Positions 15,299 through 63,764 of a stretch of 64,000 bases of DNA are shown one piece after another. The notes beneath the pieces are model-generated. The model made no database searches, was not told the DNA's origin, and saw nothing but the letters and a program-made list of their open reading frames with translations. Origin of the DNA: Octopus sinensis. Taxonomy: Eukaryota. The position numbers and the translations under genes are program-made. Every line of letters starts with the position of its first letter. Within the stretch, counting starts at the first letter, position 1. The stretch covers positions 19,344,001 through 19,408,000 of the forward strand of contig NC_043016.1 of assembly GCF_006345805.1 (NCBI RefSeq). The letters run 5' to 3'.

Positions 15299-15398
15299 NN
15301 NNNNNNNNNNNNNNNNNNNNNNNNNNNNNNNNNNNNNNNNNNNNNNNNNNNNNNNNNNNNNNNNNNNNNNNNNNNNNNNNNNNNNNNNNNNNNNNNNN
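15299..15398. other. Scaffold gap (100 N, probably of unknown true size)
   Basis: Run of exactly 100 N. Confidence 0.99.
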
Positions 15399-15804: not shown

Positions 15805-16210
15805 TGTTTGTGTGGGTTGTGTGTGTGTGTGTGTGTGTGTGTGAGGGGTTTTAGTTCACTTGTGATCTAAACGAATATGGTACGTTGAGTAAATGCTTTA
15901 ATTGGTCGACCGCTTGGTTCCAAGATCACAGCTGAGGCTGGATCAAGGAATCTATATTAGGGTTCCATTATAGCAGGTATGTATTATATTAAAGGAATGC
16001 TCAAAACCAAGGCAGGACGAGTATCTCAAGTGATTTAGAATAATTTAATTGGGGTAAGGTGAATTTGAAGGCAGAAATGTAAGAAGAAATGTGAGAAAGG
16101 GAAGCAGTTAATGTGTTCAAAAATAGGGGAAAATAAGAGGAAAGTAAATGTTAAAAAAACTAGAAGAGAATGTTCTGCGGACGGAAAATTAAGAAGACTG
16201 ATGCCCAGGT

Positions 16211-16621
16211 AGGAAGGAAGGAAGGAAGGAAAGAAGGAAGGAAGTAAGGAAGGAAGGAAGGAAGGAAGGAAGGAAGGAAGGAAGGAAGGAAGCAAGGAAG
16301 GAAGCAAGGAAGGAAGCAAGGAAGGAAGGAAGCAAGAAAGCAAGGAAGGAAGGAAGGTAGGAAGGAAGGAAGCAAGCAAGCAAGCAAGCAAGGAAGGAAG
16401 GAAGAAAGGAAGGAAGCAAGGAAGGAAGCAAGGAAGGAAGCAAGGAAGGAAGCAAGGAAGGAAGGAAGGAAGAAAGGAAGCAAGGAAGCAAGGAAGAAAG
16501 CAGGGAAGGAAGGAAGCAAGGAAGGAAGCAAGCAAGCAAGCAAGCAAGGAAGGAAGGAAGGAAGGAAGGAAGGAAGAAAGGAAGGAAGGAAGGAAGGAAG
16601 AAAGCAGGGAAGGAAGGAAGG

Positions 16622-16663
<42 letters not shown>

Positions 16664-17572
16664 GAAGGAAGGAAGGAAGCAAGGAAGGAAGCAAGGAAGC
16701 AAGGAAGCAAGGAAGGAAGCAAGCAAGCAAGCAAGGAAGGAAGGAAGGAAGGAAGCAAGCAAGGAAGGAAGGAGGCAAGGAAGCAAGGAAGGAAGGAAGC
16801 AAGGAAGGAAGGAAGGAAGCAAGGAAGAAAGCAGGGAAGGAAGGAAGCAAGGAAGGAAGCAAGCAAGCAAGCAAGGAAGGAAGGAAGGAAGGGAGGGAGG
16901 AAGGAAGGAAGCAAGGAAGGAAGCAAGGAAGGAAGCAAGGAAGGAAGGAAGGAAGCAAGCAAGCAAGCAAGGAAGGAAGGAAGGAAGGAAGAAAGCAGGG
17001 AAGGAAGGAAGCAAGGAAGCAAGGAAGGAAGGAAGCAAGCAAGCAAGCAAGGAAGCAAGGAAGCAAGGAAGGAAGCAAGGAAGGAAGGAAGGAAGGAAGC
17101 AAGGAAGGAAGGAAGGAAGGAAGGAAAGAAGGAAGGAAGCAAGGAAGCAAGCAAGCAAGCAAGGAAAGAAGGAAGCAGGGAAGGAAGGAAGGAAGCAAGG
17201 AAGGAAGCAGGAAGGAAGCAAGGAAGCAAGGAAGGAAGGAAGGAAGCAAGCAAGCAAGCAAGCAAGGAAGGAAGGAAGGAAGAAAGCAAGCAAGCAAGGA
17301 AGCAAGGAAGCAAGGAAGCAAGGAAGGAAGGAAGCAAGGAAGGAAGCAAGGAAGGAAGGAAGGAAGAAAGCAAGGAAGGAAGGAAGCAAGGAAGGAAGGA
17401 AGGAAGGAAAGAAGGAAGGAAGGAAGGAAGGAAGCAAGCAAGCAAGCAAGCAAGGAAGGAAGCAGGGAAGGAAGGAAGGAAGCAAGGAAGGAAGCAAGGA
17501 AGGAAGGAAGCAAGGAAAGAAGCAAGGAAGGGAGGAAGGAAGCAAGGAAGGAAGGAAGGAAGGAAGGAAGGA
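16211..17572. repeat. About 1.4-kb compound (GGAA)/(GCAA) microsatellite
   Basis: Directly visible. Source of the spurious 418-529 aa LPSF ORFs. Confidence 0.97.
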
Positions 17573-17664
17573 GCAGATGTTTAGATGCATAAATCAGAAT
17601 GTATCTGTACCTGGAAGCAGTCATAAGGCAAAAACGGTGTGTATGAGTGTTGGTGTAGTGTACG

Positions 17665-18810: not shown

Positions 18811-21518
18811 TTGTAACAATAACACAGTGATGGGACATTAAAAGAGTTCAAGATAACTTCACTTTTTACATCAAAGAGTCACTAAAGGAAACCACAAATC
18901 GTTTAAAAACATACTGACTTCATGCTATCGATGATCGATTATGTCACTAAAAATATGTAGCATAAATTGATAAACTTCCTTTTTTTTTACATTGAATGTC
19001 TTATTGTATTGTGTTGTAACTACCATTTGCTAACAGATGGCAGTGACTAAGATCGATGGAAATAATGAAAGCTCTTGACTAAAATGGATCACTGTGTAAA
19101 AGGACATCAACAGGATACGGGAAAACATCTCAGTTATACGAGTATGATATTATTAAATGCAAAATAAATCATGAATTCACAGGCCACCAGCTGCAACTCT
19201 ATAATAAGCTACAGAGAATCCCTAGGAACTAGTGGAAGGAGACTCTTTTGTGAGACAACTAATGGCCTCTAAACGCGAACAACCAAGTATCAAGTCTACA
19301 CTTTGTCAGTGCAGGAAACTACAAGAAATTAGGACTGTTAAACCTCCAAACTACACACCGAATTAAAGGCCATACTATCAAAATTCTAACTTCTCATTTT
19401 CATGTTGAAAAAGCAGCCCAAGCGAGAGGTAACATTGTTCAATGAGATAGAGAACACTGTGTAACTTCTCTTCTAAAACTTATAACATGACCAGTGCAAT
19501 TCTCTTGACAGTACGAGAAATTCATATTACACAGGAAGATCTTCAAACAAAAACAAAAAAAGGAGAGAAACCACGGACCATTTGATGTGTCATACTAGTT
19601 AACAGGATAGTTATGCAGAAAACATTTGTTAAGAAACGGGAGAATTTATGACAGGCTCATAGCATGCATGAACGTTGGAGTGTATCAGTTTTCTTCAATA
19701 TATTTATCCAAGTAACAAATAATTTGATGATCGATGAACCGAAAAGAGAAAAGTGTATAAATTTGAGATACAGCTGCTCATCAAATGATCTGTTCTTGAG
19801 TCTACGTAGCAACATCGCCGAAATCTATTGACAATATGGCTGGGCTAAAAGGAAGTTCTAACTACTATAATCAATGCTATTAAAGACTGAAAACAATATG
19901 GTTCATACAGCTGTCGCTAAGACCTGAGACGACTACAATAGTGAAACTAAATCAGGTTATTATCATGAATATTCTAGAACTTCAGCTCATTTGTGCTGCT
20001 TTGTGTCCAAGCAGTATTGAGAAAATACCAAGGCCACATGTTAGAATCAGCAGAGAATAATGTCACTCACGTATTTCTGTTGATTGCCTGGAGCCGTATT
20101 TAGGAAATAATCATGACACCGAGAGACAGAACTGGTTGCAATATTCCCATGGGACACACTATTGGAATTTAGTAAGAATAACTGTTCTTATCTGGTAAAT
20201 AATCGAGGAAAGATTCTTGACTAGATGAGGAATGTGGATATCAATGGCCTTTCTGTCCACCCATCCCCACCCAACCAAGAATGATTAATGCTACAAGTGT
20301 AGGGAATACGACCGTACGTAAGGAGTTAGTGACATGTCTCCTTTTGAACGCCGCACGGTCGCCCCTAACAAAATAAGAAGCTAAATACATGATATAGAAT
20401 ACAGTGCCAAAAGGAATAAATGAGGACGACAACCGTTCTACTGTTTGAGAGAGAAGAAGACTTTATTTACAATGGGTACAAAGAGAGAGTGTGTGAGTGC
20501 TAGCAAGATAGAGCGTATGTGTGCATGCGACAAGTGTTTGTGTCTGTGTGTTCGTGTATGCGACAGAAGGTGAATGTGTATACAACAGAAATACAGAGCA
20601 TAAGATGAATGTCTCAGCATATTGAGTTAAGATGGAATTTGTTTTCCAGTTCTTAAATGAGGTACACGATAGCAAGTTCTATAACAAGATTTTGAGGTCA
20701 CGAGGCAGTACCGGTTACTACACATGTAGAAGTTGTGACTATTATGCCGTGCCGCGTCTCTTGATACAGAAAGTTCTTTTAGGTAGACTGTAACTGTTTC
20801 ACCTCGGTGAAATATTCACAAACAGCGTGGGTTTAAACCTGGACGATGTTGATGTGTACATATTGCTGAAGTCGACGGAGATGGAGACGACGTAAAGTTG
20901 AAGAACGACGATGGTGATGGCGGCGGCAGAGAAAGGCGTCGGAGATGGAGAACGTCCAGTCTGTCGCTAGAACTGGAACATGGCTGAGTGGCTCGATGGT
21001 CAGAGGTTAGTTCTGAAAAGGATTGGAACCTAAGACCGGTGTTGCTGGAACGTGGTTGAGTTGCCCTGTGGTCAGTGACTAGACCTTAGAAGGTCTAAAG
21101 CCAAAAGACATGGAATAGTGAATGCTGGCCTTTTTATCGGGTTTAGATGGCTCAAATGGAGGATCAGAAAAACAGTGTCACGAGACCTTATCCAAAGGCC
21201 GTGGTTGGTTGGCTTACACACTGGCCCGAAATAAGTCGAAAGACAAACTGCGCCAAATGCCAACCAATCAGAGCAGTGGACACAACAGGGTCAAACTAGC
21301 CAAAGATGGTTGTAATCTCAAACGAGATCATTCCTAATGTGTCACTCAAACAGTGAGGATATCAGATATGCTACGCAAGTATCTCAGAAGTAATGAGAAA
21401 TTTGTGCATATAGTTTAACAATGTGTGTTTATCTATGTATCAACTTTTCTTTCGATCTACTTTTCTTGCGGCGAGATAAACATTTAAAAACACAAAACGA
21501 ACGCCATCACCACTCACA

Positions 21519-28695: not shown

Positions 28696-29138
28696 GGATC
28701 TTTTCGGTTTGAACGGCAGTTTTTTTCTAGCGGTGTCATATGAAATTGTCACCCATAATTATGACCCTAGTATCGATCTATTGCATTTCAATCTATTTTA
28801 GGGTTAGGGTTAGTTAGGGTTAAGGTTATTTAGGGTTAGAGTCAGGGGGAAGGGTATCTTTTTTTCTTCACAAATGTAAATAAACCCAATCTGTTTCTTA
28901 AACGAGGGACATTTTCATACGGCACAGAATGTTTTCACCTCAATAGACGTCATTGATTGGTTGAAATTGCTGAAATTGAAGAAGAAAACAACAAATATCT
29001 TACAAACTATAGAATTTTCTCAGTAAAGCCAAGAGAAAAGGATGTTTTATAAACACATTCTACCAGTATACGAAGTTTAAAAGTGTTTAGTTACGTGGAA
29101 ATTATTTAAAAAAACTGCCGTTCAAACCGAAAAGATAC
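28696..29138 (+). mobile_element. hAT-type MITE with a degenerate TTAGGG tract
   Basis: TIRs as above. 8-bp flanks agcgttag / agcgtaag. Confidence 0.88.
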
Positions 29139-29369
29139 AGCGTAAGTTGGCTACGAAGATAGTGTGAAGATGGCAAGGTAATCAGTCAGCGTCAAGTTGG
29201 CTACGAAGACAGTCGGTGTAAAGCTGCGATGTGACCAGTCGAAGCGAATCTGAGCGGCGTAGAAGCATATTACACAAGTCATTCAATCAGGTACGACAAC
29301 ATCTTCCACTCTAAGCAAGTTGGCTTGCTGGGCTGGCCTGCAGTTTCCAAGCTACTGACTAGACTGTTG

Positions 29370-30262
29370 GGTGCAAGTGAGATGTTGCACAGATCTGGTG
29401 GAAGACAAGAAAAATGTTCAGCAAATTGTGGAAAATGCAATTCAAGATAAAGATTTGGCCAAACACGTTTCTACACAAAAAATGAACAGATCATCCGTTT
29501 ACTTGATGACTTGATGGAAGATGTTGGCAAAGCGACCAGAAAAGATGTAGATGATGTGAAATCTCCTCTCAATGTCAGGATTGTAAAACTAAATAAAAGG
29601 TCCACTTCTTTGAAATGGAACGTTCTGAGAGAGAAATTGATATGAAAGGGTGTCAGGGAGATGTTGAGTCAGAATTACAAAATGTCCATCAAAACTTTGT
29701 AGAGAAGAATAAATCTCTCAAAGAAGTCAAAGAGAAGCTTGCACCGTGTTTAAAAGAAGCGTTTAAATCTAAAGGTGTTACTGAGAGGAAGCTTGACAAA
29801 TTTGAACCTCAGCAGGAACATGATGGGGAAAACTTGGACCAGAAAACAGATCTTTTAATGAAAGAAAATGAAAAAACTAAAGGAGCAAGCGTCTTCACTG
29901 AACAGTGACAACAGCCGACTGGCAGAAAATAAAATTTCAGTTGATCCAGGAAATTAACGAACTAAAGGTGAATATGTTACAGGCAAACAATGAACGGGAT
30001 GAGATACAGCGCAGCCTGCGTAAAAGCATTGCTGTTATGAAAGAGGAAATGTCTTTCAACTCACAAGATTTTTTAATTGAAACTGCAGAGTTTTGAAGAT
30101 GGAAATCATCACACTATGGTAGAATTAAAGAAGCTTCTCAATTCAAAGAAAATAATTAGCAAAAGATGGAAAGAAGAATGCAGTAGCAATCTCGAAGAAA
30201 TACGATGAGAAAATAGCTCAAATTCAATCTGAGATGAAGTTACAAAATTCGCAATTCTAAAC
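29370..30262 (+). pseudogene. SCLT1: Intronless, frameshifted SCLT1-like (sodium channel and clathrin linker 1) coiled-coil retrocopy
   Basis: Stitched translation: NVQQIVENAIQDKDLAK...LMEDVGKATRKDVDDVK...VESELQNVHQ...KFQLIQEINELK...IAVMKEEMSFNSQDF...EDGNHHTMVELKKLLNSKKIISKRWKEECVAISKKYDEKIAQIQSEM. This is collinear with my recollection of the SCLT1 C-terminal half (DATIRTKKEV..., EDSNRNSIVELRHLLATQQKAANRWKEE). About six frameshifts, no introns. Needs BLASTX confirmation. Confidence 0.7.
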
Positions 30263-30600
30263 TGTATGTATGTATGTATGTATGTATGTATGTATGTATG
30301 TATGTATGTATGTATGCATGTATTATGCATGTATGCATGTATGCATGCATGTATGTAAATATGCATGTATGTATGTATGTATGTATGTATGCATGCATGC
30401 ATGCATGTATGCATATATGTATGTATGCACGTATGCATGCATGTATACATGTATGCATATATGCATGTATGTATGCATGTATGTATGTATGCATGTATAT
30501 ATGCATGCATGTATATATGTATGTATGTATGCATGTATGCATGTATGTATGTATGCATGTATGCATGTATGTATGTATGTATGTATGTGTGTATGTATGT
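30263..30600. repeat. (TATG)/(CATG) microsatellite
   Basis: Directly visible. Confidence 0.97.
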
Positions 30601-33197: not shown

Positions 33198-34465
33198 TAA
33201 AACTTAGATAAAACTTAGATATGTTTCGACCAGAGATTGGTCCAGGCCATGTCTAACTTAATAGCACCACCTGATAGGATTATTCGAATCCTGTTTAAGT
33301 CAAGTTTTGTTCAAGTAGTGAGTCCCTGTTGGGTGAGTTGTATCCAGTTTTGTTCAAGTAGTGAGTTCTTGTTGGGTGAGTTGTATCCAATTATGGGTGG
33401 CTTATCTGGTATTCTTTGAAGGAATCTATCCAGACTCTGTTTGAAGTTGATGGGATCCTTTTCCTCTTTGATCTCCCTCAGGACAATGTTAAATAGGGCA
33501 GGGCCTGTTGAGGAAAAGAAATTATGTTGCAGTGTACATGTATGTTGTGATCTTGAATTTGGCAGGGGACGTATAGCCCGTGGTCCAAGTCTCGGATGAA
33601 CCTTGAAGCTAATGTTTAGGTCGTTTGGGCAAAGTTGGCGGTATATTTTCCACATCGTACAAATGATGTACCGCTCACGGCGACACTGGAGGGAGTAAAG
33701 TTTCAAGGCTTTAAGGCGATCCCAATAGTCGAGAGCAGCCATGCCTTCAATTTGTTTAGTGAGAGCCCTCTGGGGTGACTCAATTCTGGAGATGTTTTGT
33801 CTTGTGTGAGGAGACCACAGTGGGCAGCAGTATTCAAGGTGTGGCCGTACAAAGGATGAAAAAAGTGGTATGATGACACCTTGTTCTCTGGACCGGAAAG
33901 TTCTTAGATCCAGGAACTCATCCTACGAACTGTATCGACCTTCTTGTTGATGTGTGCACTCCAACTGAGATCGTCATCAACAATTACACCCAGGTCTCTG
34001 ATATTGTTAGAGGCTGTGAGCGGTTCCCCTGAAGGAAGAGAGTATGGTTGTTTTAGTGAGGAATTTCTTCCAAAATGCATCAGCTCAAATTTTCCCTCAT
34101 TCAGTTGCATTTTGTTTCTGTCTGCCCATTGACTCACAGCATATAGGTCAGACTGGAGTTGAGTTCGGTCTGCTTCTTCATTGACGATTTGCTGGAGCTT
34201 AGTGTCATCAGCGAATATTTTCACTTTGCAGTGATGTACGACACTGGAAAGGTCGTTTACATAAATTATGAAGAGTAGCGGACCCAAAACAGTTCCCTGG
34301 GGAACACCGCTGGTGACTTTTGCTGGGTTTGAGTGGACTCCATCAACTACAACATGTTGTGTTCTATTCGCTAGGAAATACTGAATCCAGTGTAGAACTT
34401 TTCCACGGATTCCAACATTTGCCAATTTTGAGAGTAGGATGTTATGGTCTACCCTGTCGAACGCT
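33198..34465 (-). mobile_element. 5'-truncated CR1-group LINE (RT C-half and 3' end), relatively young
   Basis: AFDRVDHN, SGVPQGTVLGPLLFIIYVNDL, KIFADDTKL, RPHLEYCCPLWSP, YSLQCRRERY. One frameshift near 33905. Tail (TCTAAGTTTTA)2. 43-bp tandem duplication at 33304-33389. Confidence 0.92.
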
Positions 34466-34504
34466 ATAAGTTATAAGTTATTCTAGTGACTTTTTTTTTT
34501 TGCA

Positions 34505-39384: not shown

Positions 39385-40020
39385 ATAATAATAATAATAA
39401 TAATGAAATTAATTGTATACAGTGCTCAGGTGCACCACAACTTGTCAGAAAGTGCATATAAAGTACATGCACTAATGTAGAAATGTCTGGAAAGCAAACA
39501 ATGTATGAGTCAGATACATGCTTGTGTGTGTATGGAGGGGAGAAAATCAAGTGTAGTGTTGGTGAATCTCAGGAAGCATGGAAGTTTTGAAGGATGCAGT
39601 GCTCCGACAACTAACAACTGATGCCGGCAGTTTGTTCCATGCTTCAGCAACTCTCAGCATGAAAAAATGTTTGCTGAAGTCTTGGGAGCTGTGCTGTTTT
39701 CTGACTTTGTAAATATGTCCACGGGTGTTAGATGGGTGGAGTTTGAAAAGGTGCTCAGAGTTATTGTTTGTACGATGGTTGATAATTTTATGGGTGTCTG
39801 CCAAGTCAGCTGCCAGACGTCGGAGTTTCAATGTGTCCATGCCCAGGGAAGTAAGGTGTTCAGGATATGGCAAATGCCTGATGGAGGGTATTCTTTTGGT
39901 TGCACGTCGCTGAACAGCTTCCAGACGATTGATATCCTGGGCAAGATAGGGGTTCCAGACCAGTGATGCAAATTCCAGGTGAGGTCTTACCATAGCTATA
40001 TAAAGCCGCAGATAGATAGC
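39385..40020 (-). mobile_element. CR1-group LINE 3' fragment with an (ATT)n tail
   Basis: MVRPHLEFASLVWNPY...RLEAVQRRATK...TRGHIYK...FFMLRVAEAWNKLP. The same 3' terminus recurs as a solo fragment at about 41035-41080 (+). Confidence 0.9.
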
Positions 40021-40069
40021 CAGAGAGCAGCTCACAAGACACCCTCAGCCTTCTTGACAATTTTAGCGA

Positions 40070-45840: not shown

Positions 45841-46253
45841 GGCGAGCTGGCAGAAACGTTAGCGCGCCGGGCGAAATGCGTAGCCGTATTTCGTCTGCCG
45901 TTACGTTCTGAGTTCAAATTCCGCCGAGGTCGACTTTGCCTTTAATCCTTTCGGGGTCGATAAATTAAGTACCAGTTACGCACTGGGGTCGATATAATCG
46001 ACTTAATCCGTTTGTCTGTCCTTGTTTGTCCCCTCTGTGTTTAGACCCTTGTGGGTAGTAAAAAAAATAGGTATTCCGTCTGCCGCTGCGTTCTGAGTTC
46101 AAATTCCGCCGAGATCGACTTTGCCTTTCATCCTTTCGGGGTCGATAAATGAAGTACCAGTTTTGCACTGGGGTCGATGTAATCGACTTAATCCCTTTGT
46201 CTGTCCTTGTTTGTTCCCTCTATGTTTAGCCCCTTGTGGGCAATAAAGAAATA
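45841..46253 (+). mobile_element. SINE family B dimer
   Basis: Head at 45841. The second unit joins at about 46070 (aaatag|gtattccgtctg). Confidence 0.9.
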
Positions 46254-46717
46254 TATATTAAATGGTTGGACCCACTCCTCTTTAACTGCCTTCTTTCAAA
46301 TTGAAACATCAATTGACTGAACAGAATCCCCAACACAGAGATTCTTACAAAATGATATTCTGAGAATAGAGAGGTTACTTATCAAACTGAGGTAAGTTGA
46401 CCATGTGGTACACATGGAAGACACTCGCTTATATTATACGTGTATGCTTGTATGTATAACTGTACTTTTATGTACGTATACATTTGTGTGTGTGTATGTG
46501 TGTGGGTGCATATGTGTGCCTGTGTGTGTGAATATATGTGTGTTTGTGCTTGTGTGTGCATGTGTGTGCGTGTTCAGGTGTTTGTGTATATGTGTAAATG
46601 GCCATTCGTTTGAACTGTCCCTTTGTCCCTTTGTCTGTCCTTGTTTGTCCCCTCTGTATTTAGCCCCTTGTGGGTAGTAAAGAAATACATGAGTACAGAG
46701 TAAATCTTTCTTCCAGA

Positions 46718-47205
46718 CAATTCCAAAAAGAAAAACGTCATGGCAACACAGATGTATCCTACTTCCGTGTACTGCTTTATGGCTCTTTCTCGTCCCTTAC
46801 TTTTTTTTATTTCCTTCTCATTTCAACAATTCTTACATACAATTCCAAAAAGAAAAACGTCATGGCAACACAGATGTATCCTACCTCCGTGTACTGCTTT
46901 ATGGCTCTTTCTCGTCCCTTACTTTTTTTTATTTCCTTCTCATTTCAACAATTCTTACATACAATTCCAAAAAGAAAAACGTCATGGCAACACAGATGTA
47001 TCCTACTTCCGTGTACTGCTTTATGGCTCTTTCTCGTCCCTTACTTTTTTTTATTTCCTTCTCATTTCAACAATTCTTACATACAATTCCAAAAAGAAAA
47101 ACGTCATGGCAACACAGATGTATCCTACCTCCGTGTACTGCTTTATGGCTCTTTCTCGTCCCTTACTTTTTTTTATTTCCTTCTCATTTCAATAATTCTT
47201 ACATA
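46718..47205. repeat. Tandem repeat, 4 x 122 bp, near-identical units
   Basis: caattccaaaaagaaaaacgtcatggc... starts at 46718, 46840, 46962 and 47084. Confidence 0.95.
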
Positions 47206-47855
47206 CAAACTCGATCGTTGTTATCTAATACCAGTTTTATCTTTCAAACATTGTATTATTGTCATCGTCATCATCACCATCATATCATATCCCAATATTA
47301 TACCTTTTACTTCTAAAACTAAAGGAAATAAATTGCTTACATATTAAATCTATAATCAATTTTTTTCATTATAAAGGAAACTGAATACAAAATACAAGAA
47401 AAATTAAAATTCTATTGAAGAAAGAAATAAAAAAACTATTGTTTGTTTAAGATATATCTTTTATTAGATCTTTTGAAAGACAAAAATGAATAAATTCATA
47501 CATTGTCCATTGACGATTTACTCCCAATGAAATTTTTGATTTCCCTTCAATTTTTAAAAAAAATTTTATCAGGTAAATCAAAATTTAAAATATCGATATC
47601 AATTTGATTTTAAAAATATATATCGCAGCTTGGAGTTAAATGTTTATAAAGGAAGATATCTTTTAACTGACTTCTTTTTTTGGGGCCTTTGTGTTACTCT
47701 TTTTTTTCGCCCTATCATAGCATCTGCTTCTTTTCCTTACTTGTGAACGTCGTCTTTTCCATCTTCTCTTTTTTAAGTGACCCCTTGACTTCTTTCTTTT
47801 TTGGCAACCTGGATTTTTTTTTTCTCTTTGGGTGACACCTTCGCTTCTTTCTTAC

Positions 47856-52218: not shown

Positions 52219-53738
52219 CACTGCGTGTTAAATTATTTACGACGTAGCATATTTTTTTCATTTCTCTTAGAAAAAAAAACTACTCATTGGAATTCAACGA
52301 AATTTTTAAAGAATGATGGCAATAGTTATATGCGCGTGTTGTGTAAAAAACGTGATGTTCCGTGAAACAGCGCAGAAACTACGGCCATTTACCAAATTTA
52401 CGTAAACTTTCACTGTTTCAAATTATTAGCGATTTGTAATTAAACTTATGTAAACAAGAAAATACCAATTTAATTGTATGATGTACACATACAGTCATTA
52501 CCATGAAAGAAATAGAAATAAACAAATAACGATCGTTCAAAAATGATTGGTGAGCCGGTTAGTAAGGGATATAAGAGCCTTTGTTTGAAATAAGTTGGAA
52601 AAGGCGATGGTCCACGGAACATGCTAGTTTCTGGATATTTTCTGATGTTATACAAGATACATCCACTATTACCTACCAAAGTTCGTCTTTCTTCCTAAAT
52701 TGACGTCCATTCTCGTAAACTCGTCGCTTTAGAATGCCCCACAAGTTTCTTATTGGGTTTAAGTTGAGGTAACAGGTAGGTCCCTTCATCTTCTAAAATC
52801 ACAGAAGCCTAACTGATGCAGATACTCTGTAGTTTTCTTCGCTGAGTGTGAGGGTGCATTATCTTGCATGAATATTATGGTTGTCCTGAAGGTGATCCTT
52901 TGCGTTTTTAACCACGGTTGAAGGAGCTCCCTCAGAAAGGCTATATAAGCATCCACGGCCATTTTAACACCACCTGGCACTTTCCAAGGACCAACCATAA
53001 TGCCTCCAATAATGCTAGCCCAAATAATGACGCCTCCTCCCCCTTGTTGCCGTCTCAAGCGTTGGTGACGATCTCGTCCATTTACAACCCATCCCTTGCT
53101 CCAACCATCAGGTCTATCAAGAGTATCACGAGTTAGTCCGTAAACAAAACTGGAAAAATCGACCTCCATGTTATCTTCTGCTAATTTCAGGCGATTTCGT
53201 ATGTGTATTTTGTTTAAAGGAGGCCTTTTAAATGATGTCACTGGTTTACCGACCTTTTTCAGATGACATCGGACAATTCTGGACACAGTTGTTTCGCCAA
53301 TGCGCTTGAAAAGTTCTCCACTTGTAAGACTCGGATTCTTTACAGCTTCATACTTAATTTGTCGGCTCTCTTATGTATCACAAATCGGTGATATCTTCCA
53401 ATCATTTTTGATATTTCTAATGTTGATTTACCTTTTGCAAGTCAAGAAGTAATAACAGATTTCTCTGAAGCAGTTAAGTCACATTTACGACCCATAATTA
53501 CACTGTAATCAGACCACTCGTTAATAATTTGAAGCACTGAAAGATCGTGGAAATCATGCAAATGACCGCGGTTTGTTTTACACTTGCGCAAAACCTCAGG
53601 GTTTTTTTACATGCCTTGCACATATAAATGTTGCTGTATTTCTGTGGAAATTTCGTTGAATTCCAACGAAATTCCAACGAGTAGATTTTAAATAAAATTT
53701 TAAAAAGTGTTATGTCGTTAATAATTTGAAACACATTG
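52219..53738 (-). mobile_element. Full-length Tc1-family DNA transposon with long IR/DR-type termini and a disrupted transposase (ATG at 53495)
   Basis: TA flanks. Outer repeats cactgcgtgttaaattatt / aataatttgaaacacattg, inner repeats at about 52410-52433 and about 53518-53541. Motifs QQGGGGVIIWASI, IFMQDNAPSHSAK, LNPIENLWGILKRRVY. Confidence 0.92.
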
Positions 53739-56762: not shown

Positions 56763-56934
56763 AGGCGCAGGAGTGGCTGTGTGGTAAGTAGCTTGCTAAC
56801 CAGCCACATGGTTCCGGGTTCAGTCCCACTGCGTGGCATCTTGGGCAAGTGTCTTCTGCTATAGCCCCGGGCCGACCAATGCCTTGTGAGTGGATTTGGT
56901 AGACGGAAACTGAAAGAAGCCTGTCGTATATATG

Positions 56935-56971
<37 letters not shown>

Positions 56972-57185
56972 ATGTGTGTTTGTGTTTGTCCCCCTAGCAT
57001 TGCTTGACAACCGATGCTGGTGTGTTTACGTCCCCGTAACTTAGCGGTTCGGCAAAAGAGACCGATAGAATAAGTACTGGGCTTACAAAAGAATAAGTCC
57101 CGGGGTCGAATTGCTCGACTAAAAGGTGGCGCTCCAGCATGGCCGCAGTCAAATGACTGAAACAAGTAAGTAAAGTAAAGAGTAA
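56763..57185 (+). mobile_element. SINE family A, full length
   Basis: Family A head, body and tail. Confidence 0.93.
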
Positions 57186-57445
57186 AGTTTAAAAAGCTTT
57201 CTTGTTTTCGTTTTAATTCTTTCTCTTTTTTGGGGGTTTTTTTTGCCATCCTAGATCGTTAAATACTCAGCAATAGAAAAAGGAAAGAGGAATTTCTTCC
57301 GGTATTTACTCGTAGCATGTCTGGTTCTGGTTCTGGTTCCAAATCTCAAAAAACACAACTTTTCCTCTCATGTCCCTGTACTTTGACGAGTAATATCATG
57401 TATACAGAAATTAATGTAAAAAGTCTACACCAGACTCTTTTTTTT

Positions 57446-57795
57446 TTTTACTCTTTTACTTGCTTCAGTCAATTGACTGCGGCCATGCTGGAGCCTCGGG
57501 ACTTATTCTTTGTAAGCCTAGTACTTATTCTATCGGCCTCTCTTGCTGAACCGCTAAGTTACGATGACATAAACACGCAAGAATCGGTTGTCAAGCGATG
57601 TTGTGGGGGGAGGGAGACAAACACAGAGACACAAACACACACACATATACACATATACATATATACATATACATGACGGGCTTCTTTCAGTTTCCGTCTA
57701 CCAAATCCACTCAAGGCTTTGGTCGACCCGAGGCTATAGTAGAAGAAACTTGCCATGTAGTTGGTAAGCAAGCTACTTACTACACAGCCACTCCT
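57446..57795 (-). mobile_element. SINE family A with internal deletions
   Basis: Reverse complement of family A. Confidence 0.85.
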
Positions 57796-58362: not shown

Positions 58363-58721
58363 TATATTTTATCAATATTCAAGATGTTTCCAAATGCTCA
58401 GTCCTCAAACAACCATATAGTCTTCCATAAATAGCACTAGGTTAGAATCTTCCGTGTCTTACCTGTAGTATTCACTCCATTTCTTGTACTAAATTAATTA
58501 AGACGGCGAGCTGGCAGAATCGTTAGAACACTGGGTAAAACGCTCAGCAGCGTTTCGTCCATCCTCACATTCAAAATTCGAATTCGATGTAATCGACTTA
58601 CCTCTCCCCCGAAATTATTGTCCCTGTCCCAAAATTTTAAACTGATATTAAAGGAAACCAAGCAGCTATCATTTTAGATGCTTAAGAGACCACGATGGAG
58701 TACATCTTTAGCGACTGATTC

Positions 58722-58870
58722 TTTACTCTTTTACTCGTTTACTTGTTTCAGTCATTTGACTGCGGCCATGCTGGAGCACCGCCTTTAGTCGAGCAAGTCG
58801 ACCCCGGGACTCATTCTTTGTAAGCCCAGTACTTATTCTATCGGTCTCTTTTTCCGAACCGCTAAGTGAC
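58722..58870 (-). mobile_element. SINE family A 3' fragment
   Basis: Family A tail. Confidence 0.85.
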
Positions 58871-59584
58871 TAAGTGATTGGAGCCAAACGCTGCCATTCT
58901 TGACATGATAAGAAAGAATTCCTTTGGGAACGTCAATGATTAATTTGACAAAAGAGTAAATAAAATAAATTGTCGCTTCTTCACGTATTTTAGAAATGCA
59001 ATCTTTGAAACGCCGGAGTGCAAACCTTCAAAACTGGATCCAGAATGAATTGGAAAATAAATAATTGCGTCGCAGATTTCCTTCTCGCTGACAGAGATGA
59101 ATCAGCATTGAGTAATAATGGACAGGGGAAAGGGATACATTGATTTGGCCCAAAAGGAATACGGAACATCAGGCTGGTCTTCTGAATACCTAAGTCAGTT
59201 TGTCCTTCATTGAACCCTTAACCAATTTAGTAGACAACGTTCTCAATGTCAATACGTTGGACTTTAGCAAACCTGTAAATTTCCGTTTTGTATTTTTTAT
59301 GTGGCAAATCCAAAGATGTGTCATCTGCGACAAACTTATATTCGCCGTCTTTCAAAATACAACTTCTGTTTTCTAATTTAACAACATTTGGCCAAGTGTT
59401 CAAACCCTCATCAGGTACCATGCACACACAAAAAAAATTTTAAATGCCATCGACAACAAGTTGTAAGAATTTAGTATAAAAAGTAAAGCACATTTGCTTT
59501 CGTATTGCTACTATTCTACTTTCCCAGATATGCATTCCCAGATTCCTTGTCATTTCAAATCTATAACAAACTTCTTTATCACGC

Positions 59585-59952
59585 ACTAGCACTATGACCT
59601 GGCAACGCCGGGTCATAGTGCTAGTGCATGCATATGCAGCTGCGTGCGTGCGCACATACACGCGGGTACTGTTCAAATCTCCGACCAATCACATACGGCT
59701 AGCTGGCATTCAATTGGCGTATCAAGTTTCGGGCATTTTCATTGAGTTTTGGATAGAAAATTCACAAAAAAAGTCACTTCTATTGATTTTTTTTTAATGG
59801 CTTTGCGGGGTGACTGGGAAATGTAAAGATGTGCACGACCACCCTTGGACGGTTTTGAATGACCATAGAAAGTGCGAGCCCTCTAACTGAAAAATTGTGG
59901 ATTTGTATAAAGGACGCGCACACAGACATTTTGCCGTTTATATATATAGAGA
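59585..59952 (+). mobile_element. HINE/DINE-1-like element (third family) with a long 5' hairpin
   Basis: gcactagcactatgacc-tggcaacgccg-ggtcatagtgctagtgc hairpin (59583-59627). 3' end acagacattttgccgtttatatatatagagat. Confidence 0.62.
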
Positions 59953-60290
59953 TGATTGACAATCTCAAAAATATCGAACTATAGGGAAAATGTCGATTAA
60001 GTGACATTCTATAATTTACGAGCATGATAGAAAGTGGGGTCACCATCTTGTACGTAATAACAAAAAAATAGGAATTCGCAAGACGTTTTTGTAATAAGTC
60101 ATGACATATTTATTACTGGAGGTAATGCGTTGACATATAAGGTTAATTGAAGGAAAGGCTTGTAACATTACATGAACATATTCTGTTTTTGAAGTCACAT
60201 GTCTCCAAGTAAGTGAGGCAAACGTACACGCGTGCGGGTGTGTATGCGGGTGGACCGACTCAATGCTTGTCGAAGACTGGACAGACATCG

Positions 60291-60397
60291 AGTGGCGCGA
60301 ATTTAGAAATGCGTTCTTTTATATAAGGGATGAACCGGAAGTCCCCGACTTCCACGCCAACCGGAAGCTTCTAGAATATTCGAGAACTTTCTAGAAG
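60291..60397 (-). promoter_or_regulatory. Heat-shock-type Pol II promoter: seven-pentamer HSE (60363-60397), ETS sites (60335-60353), TATA (60317-60325), initiator-like CCACT (A at 60293)
   Basis: gGAAg cTTCt aGAAt aTTCg aGAAc tTTCt aGAAg in perfect alternation. Minus-strand TATAAAAG begins 30 nt before the Inr-like A. Locally CpG-rich unique sequence. Confidence 0.75.
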
Positions 60398-60984
60398 GTC
60401 GGTAAATCCCTTTTTCGTTTTGCTTTCCTGCTTGACTGCCATGATTCCCTACAGAACCATATCATGTTTTCTTTCAACTTCGAAACAACTTAAGCATACT
60501 TCGCATTATGTCTTCCTGACCTCCATACCGATCGATTTCATGTTCATTCCAGTTCTATTCTTTGATACAAGATTATTTTTCCACTGTTACAAATGTAGAC
60601 CTGTCTGATCTATCCTGGATAGGGGCCCGCTTCCTTGTAATTTCCTTGTAATCTCATAGTAATCAAGATTCAGTTCGTCGCTTGGTCTCTCCTTTTATTT
60701 TCTATCTTTTCTACACGCCTTTGCCACTTAAAAGTACTGTCTTTTGTCTTTTGTAACAGATGGATCATCATCCCAAGATAGAAGACGCACTCTCAGACTG
60801 GACTTCTAAAATAAAGAGTGCCAGAGAACTTGAGACAATATTGTTTGTGAAGTACTGATTTGTTTGTTGAAGATGTTGGCGAATATAACAGGACTCAAAT
60901 ACAATTAGATGAATCCCAAGATCAGGAACCTAGATCGACATTACCCGTTTAGGTTACGAAATACGTGATTCTGTACTGAGCAAA

Positions 60985-61889
60985 TTCTCTTGGCTTTCTT
61001 GAGAAAATTCTGTAGTTTGTAAGCTATTTATTGTTTAATTTCTTGCATTTCGGCAATTTCAACCATTCAATGACGTCTATTAAGGTGAATACAATTTCTC
61101 CGGGCCTTTGTCAACAACAATTATTTGCGGTGTCATATGAATTTGTCACTGTTATTTATGAGAAAAAAGATACCCTGTGGCCATAAACTGAGGGGTCACT
61201 CGTAAACAGAGCTGGATAACAAAACCATTCCCTCTTTAGTGTCCACCCATAATTATGACCCTAGCATCGACCTATTGCATTTCAATCTGTTTTAGGGTTA
61301 GGGTTGGGTTAGGGTTAGAGTTAGGGTTAGAGTTAGGGTTAGGGTTAGGGTTAGGGTTAGAGTTAGGGTTAGAGTTAGGGTTAGGGTTAGGGTTAGGGTT
61401 AGGGGTGGGGAGAAGGGTATCTTTTTTTCTTCAGAAATGTAAATAAACCCACTCTGTTTCTTAAATGAATATATAATATGTAATGTGTGTGTCTGTGCAA
61501 TAGAGAGGGAAATTTGAACTGCATATGTTGTGAACTTAGAATATGTGCTTATTAATAAAAGTTTAATAACGATAATCTTTTATTCATATGAACGTAACTG
61601 ATATGAAATATGTCATAAATAACAGTGACAAATTCATATGACACCACAAATAATTGTTGTTGACAAAGGTCCGGAGAAATTGTATTCACCTCAATAGACG
61701 TCATTGATTGGTTGAAATTGCCGAAAAGCAAGAAATTAAACAACAAATAGCTTAAAAACTACAGAATTTTCTCAAGAAAGCCAAGAGAAAGAGATGTTTT
61801 ATGTAACACACTACCAGTATACGAAGTTTGAAAGTGTTTAGTTACAAAGAAATTATTTTTAAAATCTGCCGGTCAAAGCGAAAAGATCC
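60985..61889. mobile_element. Rearranged hAT MITE-family locus: 177-bp inverted arms around an expanded telomere-like tract, with a right TIR at about 61860-61889
   Basis: 60985-61161 is the inverted, slightly diverged copy of 61613-61789. Tract at 61292-61404. Confidence 0.75.
61292..61404 (+). repeat. Interstitial telomere-like tract, 19 units (14 TTAGGG, 4 TTAGAG, 1 TTGGG)
   Basis: Counted directly. Confidence 0.95.
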
Positions 61890-62477
61890 ATAGCTTAATT
61901 AATTAATAGCCTGTGAAATGTGACATCTCTACAGCGTGTTTTATTTGAGTGTAAGACAAAAGCCCCATAGTTATTCAAGTGGACAAAAGCCCCATGGTTC
62001 TCAGACATACTTCTTTTTTTTTTTTTTTTGAGGAAAAAAATTGCTTCTAAATAAATGACCAATAATTTGGGAATAAATAAATTTGACACTGATTGCACTG
62101 TGATTTTGTAATCGTTATATTATAGTGTAAGGCTACATTTTATACTCTTTGTGTCCAGTAACGGGCAACACATTGCTATGCAGTATTCTTTATCATTAGA
62201 GAGACAAAAAACTATGACAAATAACTTGTTGAGGCTGGAAATATTAATTTTAGGAAATAGGTCAGCATGACATAGTTTTCTAAACTTTTTTTGTAGATAA
62301 GATACGTTTTTACATTCAGTTTGATTCTCTTCATCACACATACACACACGCACACACAAAGGTGTGTTTGTATTTATGCGTATGCATTTTATGTACATAT
62401 ATACTCGATTGCTTCTATGTAGGTTTTATGTTTCTACATTTTTCCTGAAGTGTGCTCTGTTATTCTATTCTACTTTT

Positions 62478-62893
62478 GGATCATTTCGGTTTGAACGGCA
62501 GTTTTTAACATAATTTCTAGGTAACTAAAAAATTTTAAACTTCGTATACTGGCAGAATGTGTTTATAAAACATCTTTTTCTCTTGGCTTTATTGAGAAAA
62601 TTCTATAGTTTGTAAGATATTTGTTGTTTTTTTCTTCAATTTCTGCAATTTCAACCAATCACTGACGTCTATTGAGGTAAAGAACATTCTGTGCCGTATG
62701 AATATGTCCCTCGTTTAAGAAACAGATTGGATTTATTTACATTTCAGAAGAAAAAAAGATACCCTTCCCCCCACCCCTAACCCTAACCCTAAAACAGATT
62801 GAAATGCAATAGATCGATACTAGGGTCATAATTATGGGTGACAATTTCATAAGACACCGCTAGAAAAAACTACCGTTCAAACCGAAAAGATCC
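62478..62893 (-). mobile_element. hAT-type MITE with (CCCTAA)3
   Basis: TIRs. Perfect 8-bp TSD ctactttt. Confidence 0.92.
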
Positions 62894-62999: not shown

Positions 63000-63209
63000 C
63001 TTTTACAGGTTTCAGTCATTTGACTGCGGCCATGCTGGAGCACCGCCATTAGTCGAGCAACTCGACCCCGGGACTTATTCTTTTGTAAGCCCAGTACTTA
63101 TTCTATCGGTCTCTTTTTGCCGAACCGCTAAGTAACGGGGACATAAACACACCAGCATCGGTTGTCAAGCGATGCTAGGGGGACAAACACAGACACACAA
63201 ATACACATG

Positions 63210-63263
<54 letters not shown>

Positions 63264-63435
63264 ATATATATATACATATATACGACGGGCTTCTTTCAGT
63301 TTCCGTCTACCAAATCCACTCACAAGGCATTGGTCGGCCCGATGCTATAGTAGAAGGCACTTGCCCAAGGTGCCACGCAGTGGGACTGAACCCGGAACCA
63401 TGTGGTTGGTAAACAAGCTACTTACCACACAGCCA
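63000..63435 (-). mobile_element. SINE family A, near full length
   Basis: Reverse complement of family A. Confidence 0.9.
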
Positions 63436-63764
63436 CGTGAAATTATATAAGAAAAATTTTCTAAGACTTGACTGTTATTTCTAGCATGTAGAGAGACCTT
63501 CTAGGCTTAATTTCATGCGCTGATTGAAAATCATTTAAGAAAATTCTGGGGACTAAAAATTCCTCGAGGTGGAGCCCCAGCATGGCCGCAGTCAAATGAC
63601 TGCGACAAGTAAAAAGAAAAATATATCACAGAAGTGATTTTGATCAGGCTTTAACAAAAATTCTGGGTTCCATACGGCCATCTAAAAATTCTTTAAGGCG
63701 GTGCCCCAGCATGGCCACAGCCTAATGACTGAAACAAGTGAAACATGAAAAGAAAAAATATGAG

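What the first reader, a model, noticed from the sequence alone, without database searches (positions are those of the whole stretch)
60291..60397. Textbook heat-shock promoter with no recognisable heat-shock gene: an orphan HSF target
Seven contiguous perfect alternating nGAAn pentamers fix 21 positions. My rough base-composition estimate puts the chance at about 1e-7 per window. The HSE is followed on the minus strand by an inverted ETS pair (GGAAGTC-CCC-GACTTCC), TATAAAAG and an Inr-like CCACT at canonical 30-nt spacing. Three pentamers bind one HSF trimer, so this is a very strong site of the kind found at hsp70/hsp90-class genes. Yet no HSP, DNAJ or chaperonin coding sequence is visible downstream in the window. 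It could drive a stress-induced lncRNA (hsr-omega/SatIII-like) through the repeat- and dsRNA-rich region, a gene with a long first intron and small exons, or be a stranded promoter.
Basis: partly seen in the sequence, partly recalled or inferred. Interest (0 to 1): 0.75.

Follow-up and report, generated by a model that had tools for sequence, protein, structure and literature searches.

The report
Strong heat-shock promoter without a gene
The sequence really holds an unusually perfect heat-shock-factor binding array in front of a TATA-box promoter, but nothing protein-like lies in the 60 kb it points at. It is therefore a good candidate for a heat-switched non-coding RNA gene, and this cannot be proved without expression data.

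Summary
Window 60363-60397 holds seven contiguous perfect alternating nGAAn/nTTCn units, with a chance expectation of 8e-8 per window. On the minus strand they are followed by two ACCGGAAG ETS cores, a 7-3-7 palindrome, TATAAAAG (60323-60316) and CCACT, with A+1 at 60293, exactly 30 nt after the TATA.

The three 10-bp units share only the HSF contact bases, so this is a binding-site array and not a decayed tandem repeat. The block sits in a 2.1-kb stretch that is single-copy within the window and mildly CpG-rich.

I found no chaperone or other recognisable coding sequence:
- A tblastn panel of heat-shock proteins was negative.
- Pfam scans of minus-strand ORFs across 60 kb and plus-strand ORFs across 28-64 kb gave only transposon remnants.
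- ORFs in the first 1.45 kb had no relative among 1.84 billion representative proteins.
- Rfam gave no match.

Downstream there is no good splice donor for 1.7 kb, and poly(A) signals lie at +180 and +496.

The best reading is a genuine HSF-driven Pol II promoter that makes a short, probably non-coding RNA. The rivals are a distant gene, a relic, a transposon-borne promoter and an enhancer. Heat induction, HSF binding, copy number and conservation could not be tested. Interest is moderate.

The parts
60363..60397 (-). Heat-shock element: seven contiguous perfect alternating nGAAn/nTTCn pentamers, at -70 to -104 from the predicted minus-strand TSS. This is room for two HSF trimers plus one spare unit. 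It contains an exact match to the classical 14-bp consensus CTnGAAnnTTCnAG (CTAGAATATTCGAG).
   Evidence: Searches give the sequence and a chance expectation of 8.3e-8 per window. One search gives 6 overlapping 3-unit matches in the window, 5 of them in this array, against 0.62 expected. One search shows the flanking n positions use all four bases while the 21 core bases are invariant.
60334..60367 (+). Two direct ACCGGAAG ETS-type cores (60334-60341 and 60360-60367). The second overlaps the first HSE unit. They bracket the 7-3-7 palindrome GGAAGTC-CCC-GACTTCC (60337-60353), which supplies a third, inverted GGAA core.
   Evidence: One search gives the sequence. One search finds 4 ACCGGAAG in the window against 0.54 expected, with no shuffle out of 100 reaching 4. 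That these are ETS sites is inferred from the motif only.
60316..60323 (-). TATA box TATAAAAG, at -30 to -23.
   Evidence: The motif alone is at chance frequency in the window. The evidence is its placement 40 bp from the HSE and 30 nt from the Inr-like site.
60291..60295 (-). Inr-like CCACT. The predicted transcription start is the A at 60293.
   Evidence: One search gives the sequence. The TSS is inferred from spacing and has not been observed.
59600..60600 (.). Local CpG-rich patch around the promoter.
   Evidence: CpG observed/expected is 1.1-1.4 in 400-bp windows here, against a window mean of 0.73 (sd 0.35).
58871..60984 (.). Stretch holding the promoter that is single-copy within the window. 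It is bounded by a SINE copy (58720-58870) on one side and an inverted-repeat element (from 60985) on the other.
   Evidence: self-blastn; repeat families.
60109..60114 (-). First poly(A) signal, AATAAA, at +180 of the predicted transcript. It is followed by a T-rich stretch.
   Evidence: Whether it is used is not known.
59793..59798 (-). Second poly(A) signal, ATTAAA, at +496. The next one lies at +2452.
60043..60288 (-). First ORF of the predicted transcript (82 aa). Its ATG lies only 5 nt after the predicted start. No homologue was found, so it is probably not a real coding sequence.
   Evidence: Searches give the ORF map. Searches found no relative, and one search found it is not on record as a called gene.

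Best explanation
This is a genuine HSF-responsive RNA polymerase II promoter that fires on the minus strand at about 60293.

How it would work. On proteotoxic stress, HSF trimers would cooperatively occupy the seven-unit HSE at -70 to -104. ETS-type factors on the ACCGGAAG cores (-41 to -74) would give basal accessibility. TFIID would be positioned by TATAAAAG at -30 and the CCACT initiator.

What it would make. The product is not a chaperone mRNA. The most likely product is a short, unspliced RNA that is probably non-coding. It would be about 0.2 kb if the AATAAA at +180 is used and about 0.5 kb if the ATTAAA at +496 is used. Under stress, read-through would continue into the inverted SINE copies 2.6-3.5 kb downstream.

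Shown: the motifs and their geometry, their non-random occurrence, single-copy status within the window, and the absence of recognisable coding sequence.

Inferred: HSF binding, heat induction, the start site, the RNA ends and the lack of coding function.
For: - HSE: seven perfect units, 8.3e-8 expected per window.
- Not a tandem repeat: the three 10-bp units differ at 3-4 of their 4 free positions and at 0 of 6 core positions. The 5' flank is A in 5 of 7 units, which matches the AGAAn preference known from Drosophila HSEs (my own knowledge). This pattern fits selection for HSF contacts.
- Literature: HSF1 prefers long contiguous HSEs, and HSEs also drive non-protein-coding transcription (PMC12366260).
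- Core promoter: TATA at -30 and Inr at +1. There is a pair of ACCGGAAG cores, 4 in the window against 0.54 expected.
- CpG o/e is 1.1-1.4 against 0.73 for the window.
- The block is single-copy in the window.
- No chaperone: a tblastn panel of HSP70, HSP90, HSP60, HSP10, HSPB1, DNAJB1 and ubiquitin gave only E>0.6 noise.
- Pfam on minus-strand ORFs >=40 aa over 4.5-60.3 kb gave only a Tc1/mariner remnant. The LINE at 1-1914 scored RVT_1 at 5e-22 as a positive control.
- ORFs in the first 1.45 kb have 0 relatives among 1.84 billion representative proteins.
- No Rfam family was matched.
- There is no donor scoring >=6.5 for 1.69 kb, and poly(A) signals lie at +180 and +496.
- Precedent: HSF-1 directly drives miRNA, unclassified ncRNA and pseudogene transcripts in C. 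elegans (PMC6765114). HSF1 drives SatIII, TERRA, eRNAs and NEAT1 in mammals (PMC9032817).
Against: - There are no expression or binding data of any kind.
- The start site is only predicted.
- A 1.69-kb donor-free stretch is not unusual here: 8.6% of inter-donor gaps in the window are as long.
- AATAAA/ATTAAA are frequent in AT-rich DNA, so the splice-site and poly(A) argument is weak.
- The predicted 200-nt RNA is not clearly structured (z -1.7).
- Short or lineage-specific exons (<40 aa), and exons beyond the window start, would have escaped the searches.
- The three word-indexed protein searches were negative, but a 45-aa reverse-transcriptase control piece embedded in one of them also found nothing. 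Those negatives therefore carry little weight.
- Genome-wide copy number and conservation are unknown.
Confidence: 0.45

Rival explanations
1. The promoter belongs to an ordinary protein-coding gene. A short non-coding first exon is spliced across a very long first intron to coding exons. Those exons are either too short or lineage-specific to be recognised, or they lie beyond the start of the window, more than 60 kb away.
For: - Weak donors exist at +66 (CGT|GTACGT), +95 and +250.
- The window looks like a repeat-filled gene desert or giant intron: 36% is repeated within the window itself, and it carries LINE, SINE and mariner remnants.
- My searches only covered ORFs of at least 30-42 aa.
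Against: - No recognisable exon lies in 60 kb.
- No strong donor lies before two poly(A) signals.
- From established knowledge (Yost and Lindquist 1986), severe heat shock blocks splicing, and strongly inducible heat-shock genes are intron-poor and compact. A first intron of tens of kb would delay the product by tens of minutes. That sits badly with a promoter of maximal HSF strength.
Confidence: 0.2
2. It is a stranded or relic promoter. It would be the 5' region of a former heat-shock gene whose body was lost, or a duplicated fragment of an hsp promoter. It may still bind HSF but has no selected product.
For: - No gene lies downstream.
- The surrounding DNA has been heavily remodelled by SINE and other repeat insertions.
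- A precedent from memory is the Drosophila 87C alpha-beta/gamma units, where hsp70 5' fragments are fused to unrelated sequence.
Against: - All 21 HSE core bases, the TATA box and the ETS cores are intact, while the free positions are fully diverged.
- CpGs have not decayed.
- No remnant of an hsp coding sequence was detectable, even at E=10.
- A relic would have to be very young.
Confidence: 0.15
3. The block is part of a transposable element that carries its own heat-shock-responsive promoter. Examples of this kind are Helitrons in Caenorhabditis and the ONSEN LTR in Arabidopsis.
For: - TE-borne HSEs are well documented (PMC6927752; ONSEN is cited in PMC9032817).
- The window is TE-rich.
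- A strong 51-nt palindrome lies 690 nt away.
Against: - There is only one copy in 64 kb, and no similarity to anything else in the window.
- No terminal inverted repeats or LTRs flank it.
- No TE protein domain lies in 57.8-61.0 kb.
- I saw no primer-binding-site-like or Helitron-end features on reading the sequence.
- The surrounding unique DNA looks like the host sequence into which SINEs were inserted.
Confidence: 0.08
4. It is a distal heat-shock enhancer for a gene outside the window. Any local transcripts are short enhancer RNAs with no function of their own.
For: - HSF1-bound enhancers that make eRNAs are known in mammals (PMC9032817).
- Both directions meet a poly(A) signal within about 0.2-0.45 kb and lack early strong donors. 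That is the pattern expected of unstable, bidirectional transcription.
Against: A consensus TATAAAAG and an initiator at exact spacing on one strand define a directional core promoter rather than a typical enhancer. No TATA lies on the plus-strand side of the HSE.
Confidence: 0.1
5. It is a chance motif cluster or a low-complexity artefact.
For: TATAAAAG alone is at chance frequency.
Against: - The expectation for the seven-unit array is 8.3e-8 per window. Even across a few gigabases that is well below one occurrence.
- The units are not copies of one another, so the array is not a microsatellite.
Confidence: 0.01

Closest known systems
Drosophila hsp70 and hsp83 (Hsp90) promoters, the classical HSE-TATA heat-shock promoters (from memory)
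   Same: A contiguous array of inverted nGAAn units lies within about 100 bp upstream of a TATA box at -30, with a defined initiator. hsp83 in particular has one long contiguous array, and its expression has a constitutive component. The array here contains an exact match to the 14-bp consensus CTnGAAnnTTCnAG.
   Different: No chaperone ORF follows. hsp70 would give an ORF of about 640 aa within 250 nt, and hsp83 a coding exon after a short intron. Neither is present in 60 kb.
HSF-driven stress lncRNAs: Drosophila hsr-omega (93D) and human Satellite III (PMC9032817)
   Same: These are HSF-dependent Pol II transcription units with no protein product.
   Different: Those RNAs are built on long tandem repeats. 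Here only microsatellites and dispersed SINEs lie downstream, and no array with a period over 40 bp lies within 13 kb. No sequence relationship was tested or is expected.
C. elegans ncRNA genes bound and induced by HSF-1 (miR-239, unclassified ncRNAs, pseudogene dct-10; PMC6765114)
   Same: These are single-locus, non-chaperone and often short transcripts, with HSEs directly in their promoters.
   Different: They have ChIP and RNA evidence, and this locus has none. No miRNA-like precursor is evident here. The 51-nt hairpin at 59580-59630 is too short for a canonical pri-miRNA, and Rfam is negative.
Transposon-borne HSEs: Caenorhabditis Helitrons (PMC6927752) and Arabidopsis ONSEN
   Same: Strong HSEs lie away from chaperone genes in repeat-rich DNA.
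   Different: No TE termini, no TE protein and no second copy in the window.
Drosophila 87C alpha-beta/gamma elements (from memory)
   Same: An hsp70-type promoter drives heat-inducible transcripts of unrelated, non-coding sequence.
   Different: Those are tandemly repeated next to the hsp70 genes and keep recognisable hsp70 5' sequence. No hsp gene is nearby here, and homology to the species' own hsp70 promoter could not be tested.
HSF1-induced TERRA from subtelomeres (reviewed in PMC9032817)
   Same: An HSE lies about 0.9 kb from a (TTAGGG)19 tract. A plus-strand transcript through it would carry UUAGGG repeats.
   Different: The tract is short and interstitial, and it sits inside an inverted-repeat element. 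The TATA and Inr point the other way, and an AATAAA lies between the HSE and the tract.

Membership tests
HSF-dependent heat-shock promoter (hsp70 type) | At least three contiguous inverted nGAAn units | tested here: met
   Seven perfect units at 60363-60397.
HSF-dependent heat-shock promoter (hsp70 type) | HSE within a few hundred bp upstream of a TATA/Inr core promoter | tested here: met
   HSE at -70 to -104, TATAAAAG at -30 and CCACT at +1 on the minus strand. The TSS itself is predicted, not observed.
HSF-dependent heat-shock promoter (hsp70 type) | HSF occupancy and heat-inducible transcription | not testable with these tools
   No expression, ChIP or run-on data are reachable.
HSF-dependent heat-shock promoter (hsp70 type) | Drives a chaperone or co-chaperone gene | tested here: not met
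   The tblastn panel was negative. Pfam on ORFs of both strands gave only TE remnants. There were 0 relatives for proximal ORFs among 1.84 billion representatives.
hsr-omega / Satellite III type stress lncRNA | Transcript built on a long tandem-repeat array | tested here: not met
   TRF finds only di- and tetranucleotide microsatellites in the 13 kb downstream. The nearest longer-period arrays (122 bp x4, 185 bp x2) lie at 45.9-47.2 kb.
hsr-omega / Satellite III type stress lncRNA | Nuclear-retained RNA that nucleates stress bodies | not testable with these tools
   This needs RNA FISH after heat shock.
TE-borne HSE (Helitron or LTR type) | Multicopy element with defined termini (LTRs, TIRs, or Helitron 5'-TC / 3' hairpin-CTRR) | tested here: inconclusive
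   The block is single-copy in the window and no flanking LTR or TIR was found. Genome-wide copy number is not testable here.
Known structured ncRNA families (Rfam) | Match to a curated covariance model | tested here: not met
   There were 0 matches at gathering score over the whole window. Only chance-level matches (E 0.1-0.2, far below gathering) were found in 58400-61000.
Canonical miRNA host transcript | Hairpin with a stem of about 33-35 bp and an apical loop of 10 nt or more | tested here: not met
   The 59580-59630 hairpin has about 23 bp and a 3-nt loop.

The most novel reading that the evidence does not exclude
The locus is a lineage-specific, HSF-switched non-coding RNA gene. That would be the first such stress lncRNA described in a mollusc or cephalopod. 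Its heat-induced read-through transcript would run through inverted SINE pairs (56926-57089 against 57509-57672). It would therefore deliver a burst of long double-stranded RNA on heat shock, for example as a temperature-dependent substrate or sponge for the RNA-editing machinery.
Probability: 0.15. Interest if true: 0.65.

Novelty: new member of a known kind. Interest (0 to 1): 0.4.

Why it matters
If the promoter is active, it marks a heat-induced transcript that genome annotation based on protein homology cannot see. It would add an invertebrate example outside flies and worms to the growing list of non-coding HSF targets.

There is also a practical side. A compact 110-bp block holding a maximal HSE, ETS sites, a TATA box and an initiator is a natural candidate for an endogenous heat-inducible expression cassette in an animal group that lacks genetic tools.

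If it is inactive or a relic, it is a reminder that even a perfect motif array does not define a gene.

Tried and rejected
1. Hidden chaperone gene. It gave only noise (best E 0.62).

2. Hidden gene of any kind.
   - Pfam was run on stop-to-stop ORFs joined by X. It covered the minus strand at 36-60.3 kb and 4.5-42.6 kb, and the plus strand at 28-64 kb.
   - The only hit was a Tc1/mariner HTH remnant. The LINE control scored well.

3. Predicted proteins from this locus or its orthologues. Three word-indexed searches of 5.8 billion proteins used concatenated ORFs: both strands at 59.2-60.8 kb, minus strand at 42.6-60.3 kb, and minus strand at 4.8-42.6 kb.
   - None gave a hit.
   - A 45-aa reverse-transcriptase control piece also gave none, so these negatives are weak.

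4. A full HMMER search of 1.84 billion representatives with the ORFs of the first 1.45 kb gave 0 hits.

5. I tried exact look-ups of four window ORFs, hoping to recover the source record and its gene calls. None is on record. The organism was therefore not verified.

6. A locus-specific 20-mer was scanned in metagenome contigs. It gave two chance matches in GC-rich bacterial contigs with no HSE.

7. The literature was searched for the exact motif strings (0 papers) and for cephalopod HSE, HSF or heat-stress lncRNA work (nothing specific).

8. Rfam and tRNA scans were negative.

9. TE origin: no LTR, TIR or second copy was found.

10. Structured-RNA idea: the first 200 nt fold only marginally better than shuffles (z -1.7).

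11. The hairpin at 59580-59630 is too short to be a miRNA precursor.

Full report
**What is there.** On the + strand, window 60363-60397 reads GGAAG CTTCT AGAAT ATTCG AGAAC TTTCT AGAAG. These are seven contiguous, perfect, alternating nGAAn/nTTCn pentamers.
- From base composition, such an array is expected 8.3e-8 times per 64-kb window. Even over a few gigabases that is far below one.
- The only other run of three or more units in the window is a three-unit site at 19966-19980.
- Read on the minus strand, the array is followed by these features:
  - ACCGGAAG at 60360-60367 (+ strand sense), which overlaps the first unit.
  - The palindrome GGAAGTC-CCC-GACTTCC at 60337-60353.
  - A second ACCGGAAG at 60334-60341.
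  - TATAAAAG at 60323->60316.
  - CCACT at 60295->60291.
- With the A at 60293 as +1, the TATA box starts at -30, the ETS cores lie at -41 to -74 and the HSE at -70 to -104.
- ACCGGAAG occurs 4 times in the window against 0.54 expected.
- TATAAAAG alone is at chance frequency, 4 against 5.8 expected. Only its placement counts.

**Is it a binding-site array or a repeat?**
- I turned all seven units to the nGAAn sense. They read GGAAG, AGAAG, AGAAT, CGAAT, AGAAC, AGAAA, AGAAG.
- The three 10-bp units differ from one another at 3-4 of their 4 free positions and at none of their 6 core positions.
- The 3' free position uses all four bases. The 5' free position is A in five of seven units.
- The units therefore resemble each other only where HSF touches DNA. 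That is what selection for HSF binding predicts, and it is not what a drifting tandem duplication would leave.
- The array also contains an exact match to the classical 14-bp consensus CTnGAAnnTTCnAG (my own knowledge of the consensus; sequence).
- A recent review states that HSF1 prefers long contiguous HSEs, and that HSEs are not confined to promoters of protein-coding genes (PMC12366260).

**Setting.**
- Self-comparison of the window shows that 36% of it is repeated internally. The promoter lies in a 2.1-kb stretch (58871-60984) with no second copy in the window.
- That stretch is bounded by a SINE copy (58720-58870) on one side. On the other side is a 177-nt inverted-repeat element that encloses a (TTAGGG)19 tract.
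- No LTRs or terminal inverted repeats flank the block.
- CpG observed/expected is 1.1-1.4 across 59.6-60.6 kb, against a window mean of 0.73 (sd 0.35). This is a modest enrichment that fits a promoter kept unmethylated in the germ line, but it proves nothing by itself.
- The window has no Rfam match at gathering score and no tRNA gene.

**What lies downstream.**
- Pfam scans of all non-repeated, non-low-complexity stop-to-stop ORFs of at least 40-42 aa covered the minus strand from 60.3 kb down to 4.5 kb. They found only a Tc1/mariner helix-turn-helix remnant at about 52.7-53.4 kb.
- As a positive control, the LINE fragment at 1-1914 scored RVT_1 at 5e-22.
- The plus strand from 28 to 64 kb gave nothing.
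- The ORFs of the first 1.45 kb of the predicted transcript have no relative among 1.84 billion representative proteins in a full HMMER search.
- Three word-indexed searches of 5.8 billion proteins with concatenated ORFs were also empty. I give these little weight, because a 45-aa reverse-transcriptase control piece placed in the last query also found nothing.

Within the limits of homology search on ORFs of at least 30-42 aa, the promoter is orphan for the whole 60 kb it faces.

**Shape of the predicted transcript.**
- From +1 the first ATG is at +6. It opens an 82-aa ORF with no homologue. It is followed by a scatter of ATGs with one- to seven-codon ORFs. This is not the look of an mRNA leader plus coding region.
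- With a simple donor matrix, no site scores 6.5 or more until +1692, and that site lies inside a SINE-like repeat. The best early candidates are weak: CGT|GTACGT at +66 (score 4.8) and ATG|GTGACC at +250 (score 5.4).
- Poly(A) signals lie at +180 (AATAAA, 60114->60109) and +496 (ATTAAA, 59798->59793). There are no more until +2452.
- Taken at face value this predicts a short unspliced RNA of about 0.2-0.5 kb.
- The argument is weak. Donor-free gaps of this length make up 8.6% of gaps in the window, and poly(A) hexamers are common in AT-rich DNA.
- The first 200 nt fold only marginally better than shuffled sequence (z -1.7). A permissive Rfam scan of 58.4-61.0 kb gives only chance-level matches.
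- No long tandem repeat follows within 13 kb, so the hsr-omega/SatIII comparison fails on structure.

**Best explanation and rivals.**
- The motif evidence makes it very likely, about 0.8, that this is or very recently was a real HSF-type promoter.
- For its product I favour a short, probably non-coding, heat-inducible RNA. Overall confidence in that reading is 0.45.
- There is good precedent. In C. elegans, HSF-1 binds HSEs at a miRNA, unclassified ncRNAs and pseudogenes, and induces them (PMC6765114). In mammals, HSF1 drives SatIII, TERRA, enhancer RNAs and NEAT1 (PMC9032817).
- Distant coding gene across a very long first intron (0.2). This cannot be excluded. It fits poorly with what is known about heat-shock genes, which are compact and intron-poor because splicing fails under severe heat shock (established knowledge).
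- Relic or duplicated promoter fragment (0.15). This is disfavoured because every functional base is intact and the CpGs are retained.
- TE-borne promoter (0.08). Nothing in the window supports it, but only a genome-wide search can test it (Helitron precedent: PMC6927752).
- Distal enhancer (0.1). This is disfavoured by the directional TATA/Inr pair.
- Chance is excluded.

**What could not be done.**
- No cephalopod genome, transcriptome or annotation is reachable with these tools.
- Exact look-ups of four window ORFs found no record. The source organism, the genome-wide copy number of the block, its conservation and any expression evidence therefore remain untested.
- A 20-mer scan of metagenome contigs gave only two irrelevant bacterial matches.
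- Literature searches found nothing on this sequence or on cephalopod HSEs.

**Verdict.**
- This is a new member of a known kind, namely HSF targets that are not chaperone genes.
- Interest is moderate. The finding is solid and cheap to test with stranded RNA-seq before and after heat shock. The block could be useful as a native inducible promoter. Without expression data it remains a candidate.

Noticed in passing
window 60985-62840: A (TTAGGG)19 interstitial telomere-like tract lies at 61292-61404. It sits between 177-nt arms that are 96% complementary (60985-61161 and 61613-61789). Further partial copies of the same repeat lie in alternating orientation at 62578-62688 and 62711-62840. The cluster is 0.6-2.4 kb from the HSE on its upstream side.
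   Followed up: partly
window 59580-59630: A near-perfect 51-nt palindrome/hairpin has 24-nt arms that are 92% complementary. The 121-nt context folds at -56 kcal/mol (z -5.3). It lies about 690 nt downstream of the predicted minus-strand start. It is too short for a canonical pri-miRNA and has no Rfam match.
   Followed up: partly
window 56773-57672 and 63115-63436: SINE copies lie in inverted orientation around and downstream of the promoter. One pair is 56773-56956 against 63253-63436 (184 nt, 95%). Another is 56926-57089 against 57509-57672 (164 nt, 80%). Any long transcript through them would fold into double-stranded RNA.
   Followed up: no
window 1-1914 (minus strand): A LINE fragment has an open 637-aa frame carrying an APE-type endonuclease and a reverse transcriptase (RVT_1, E 5e-22). 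It runs off the start of the window.
   Followed up: partly
window 52700-53450 (minus strand): A Tc1/mariner transposase remnant has a weak HTH_Tnp_Tc3_2 hit and a DDE-like tail in a 194-aa open frame.
   Followed up: partly
window c. 28700-30300 (plus strand): Several adjacent ORFs in different frames have a charged, coiled-coil-like composition (for example KVHFFEMERSEREIDMKG...ENEKTKGASVFTEQ). They could be a frameshifted pseudogene or an unknown TE protein. They have no Pfam hit.
   Followed up: partly
window 15299-15398: A run of 100 N marks an assembly gap.
   Followed up: no
window 16000-17650: A strongly purine-skewed low-complexity block (GC skew 0.62, AT skew 0.67 over 16-18 kb) gives spurious ORFs of 418-529 aa.
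   Followed up: no
window 45886-47208: Tandem repeats with long periods lie here: 185 bp x2 (91% matches) and 122 bp x4.1 (98% matches).
   Followed up: no
window 33311-34470 and 39547-40044 (minus strand): Further open frames that look like reverse transcriptase (for example ...VPQGTVLGPLLFIIYVNDL...). They are probably non-LTR retrotransposon fragments and were not classified.
   Followed up: no
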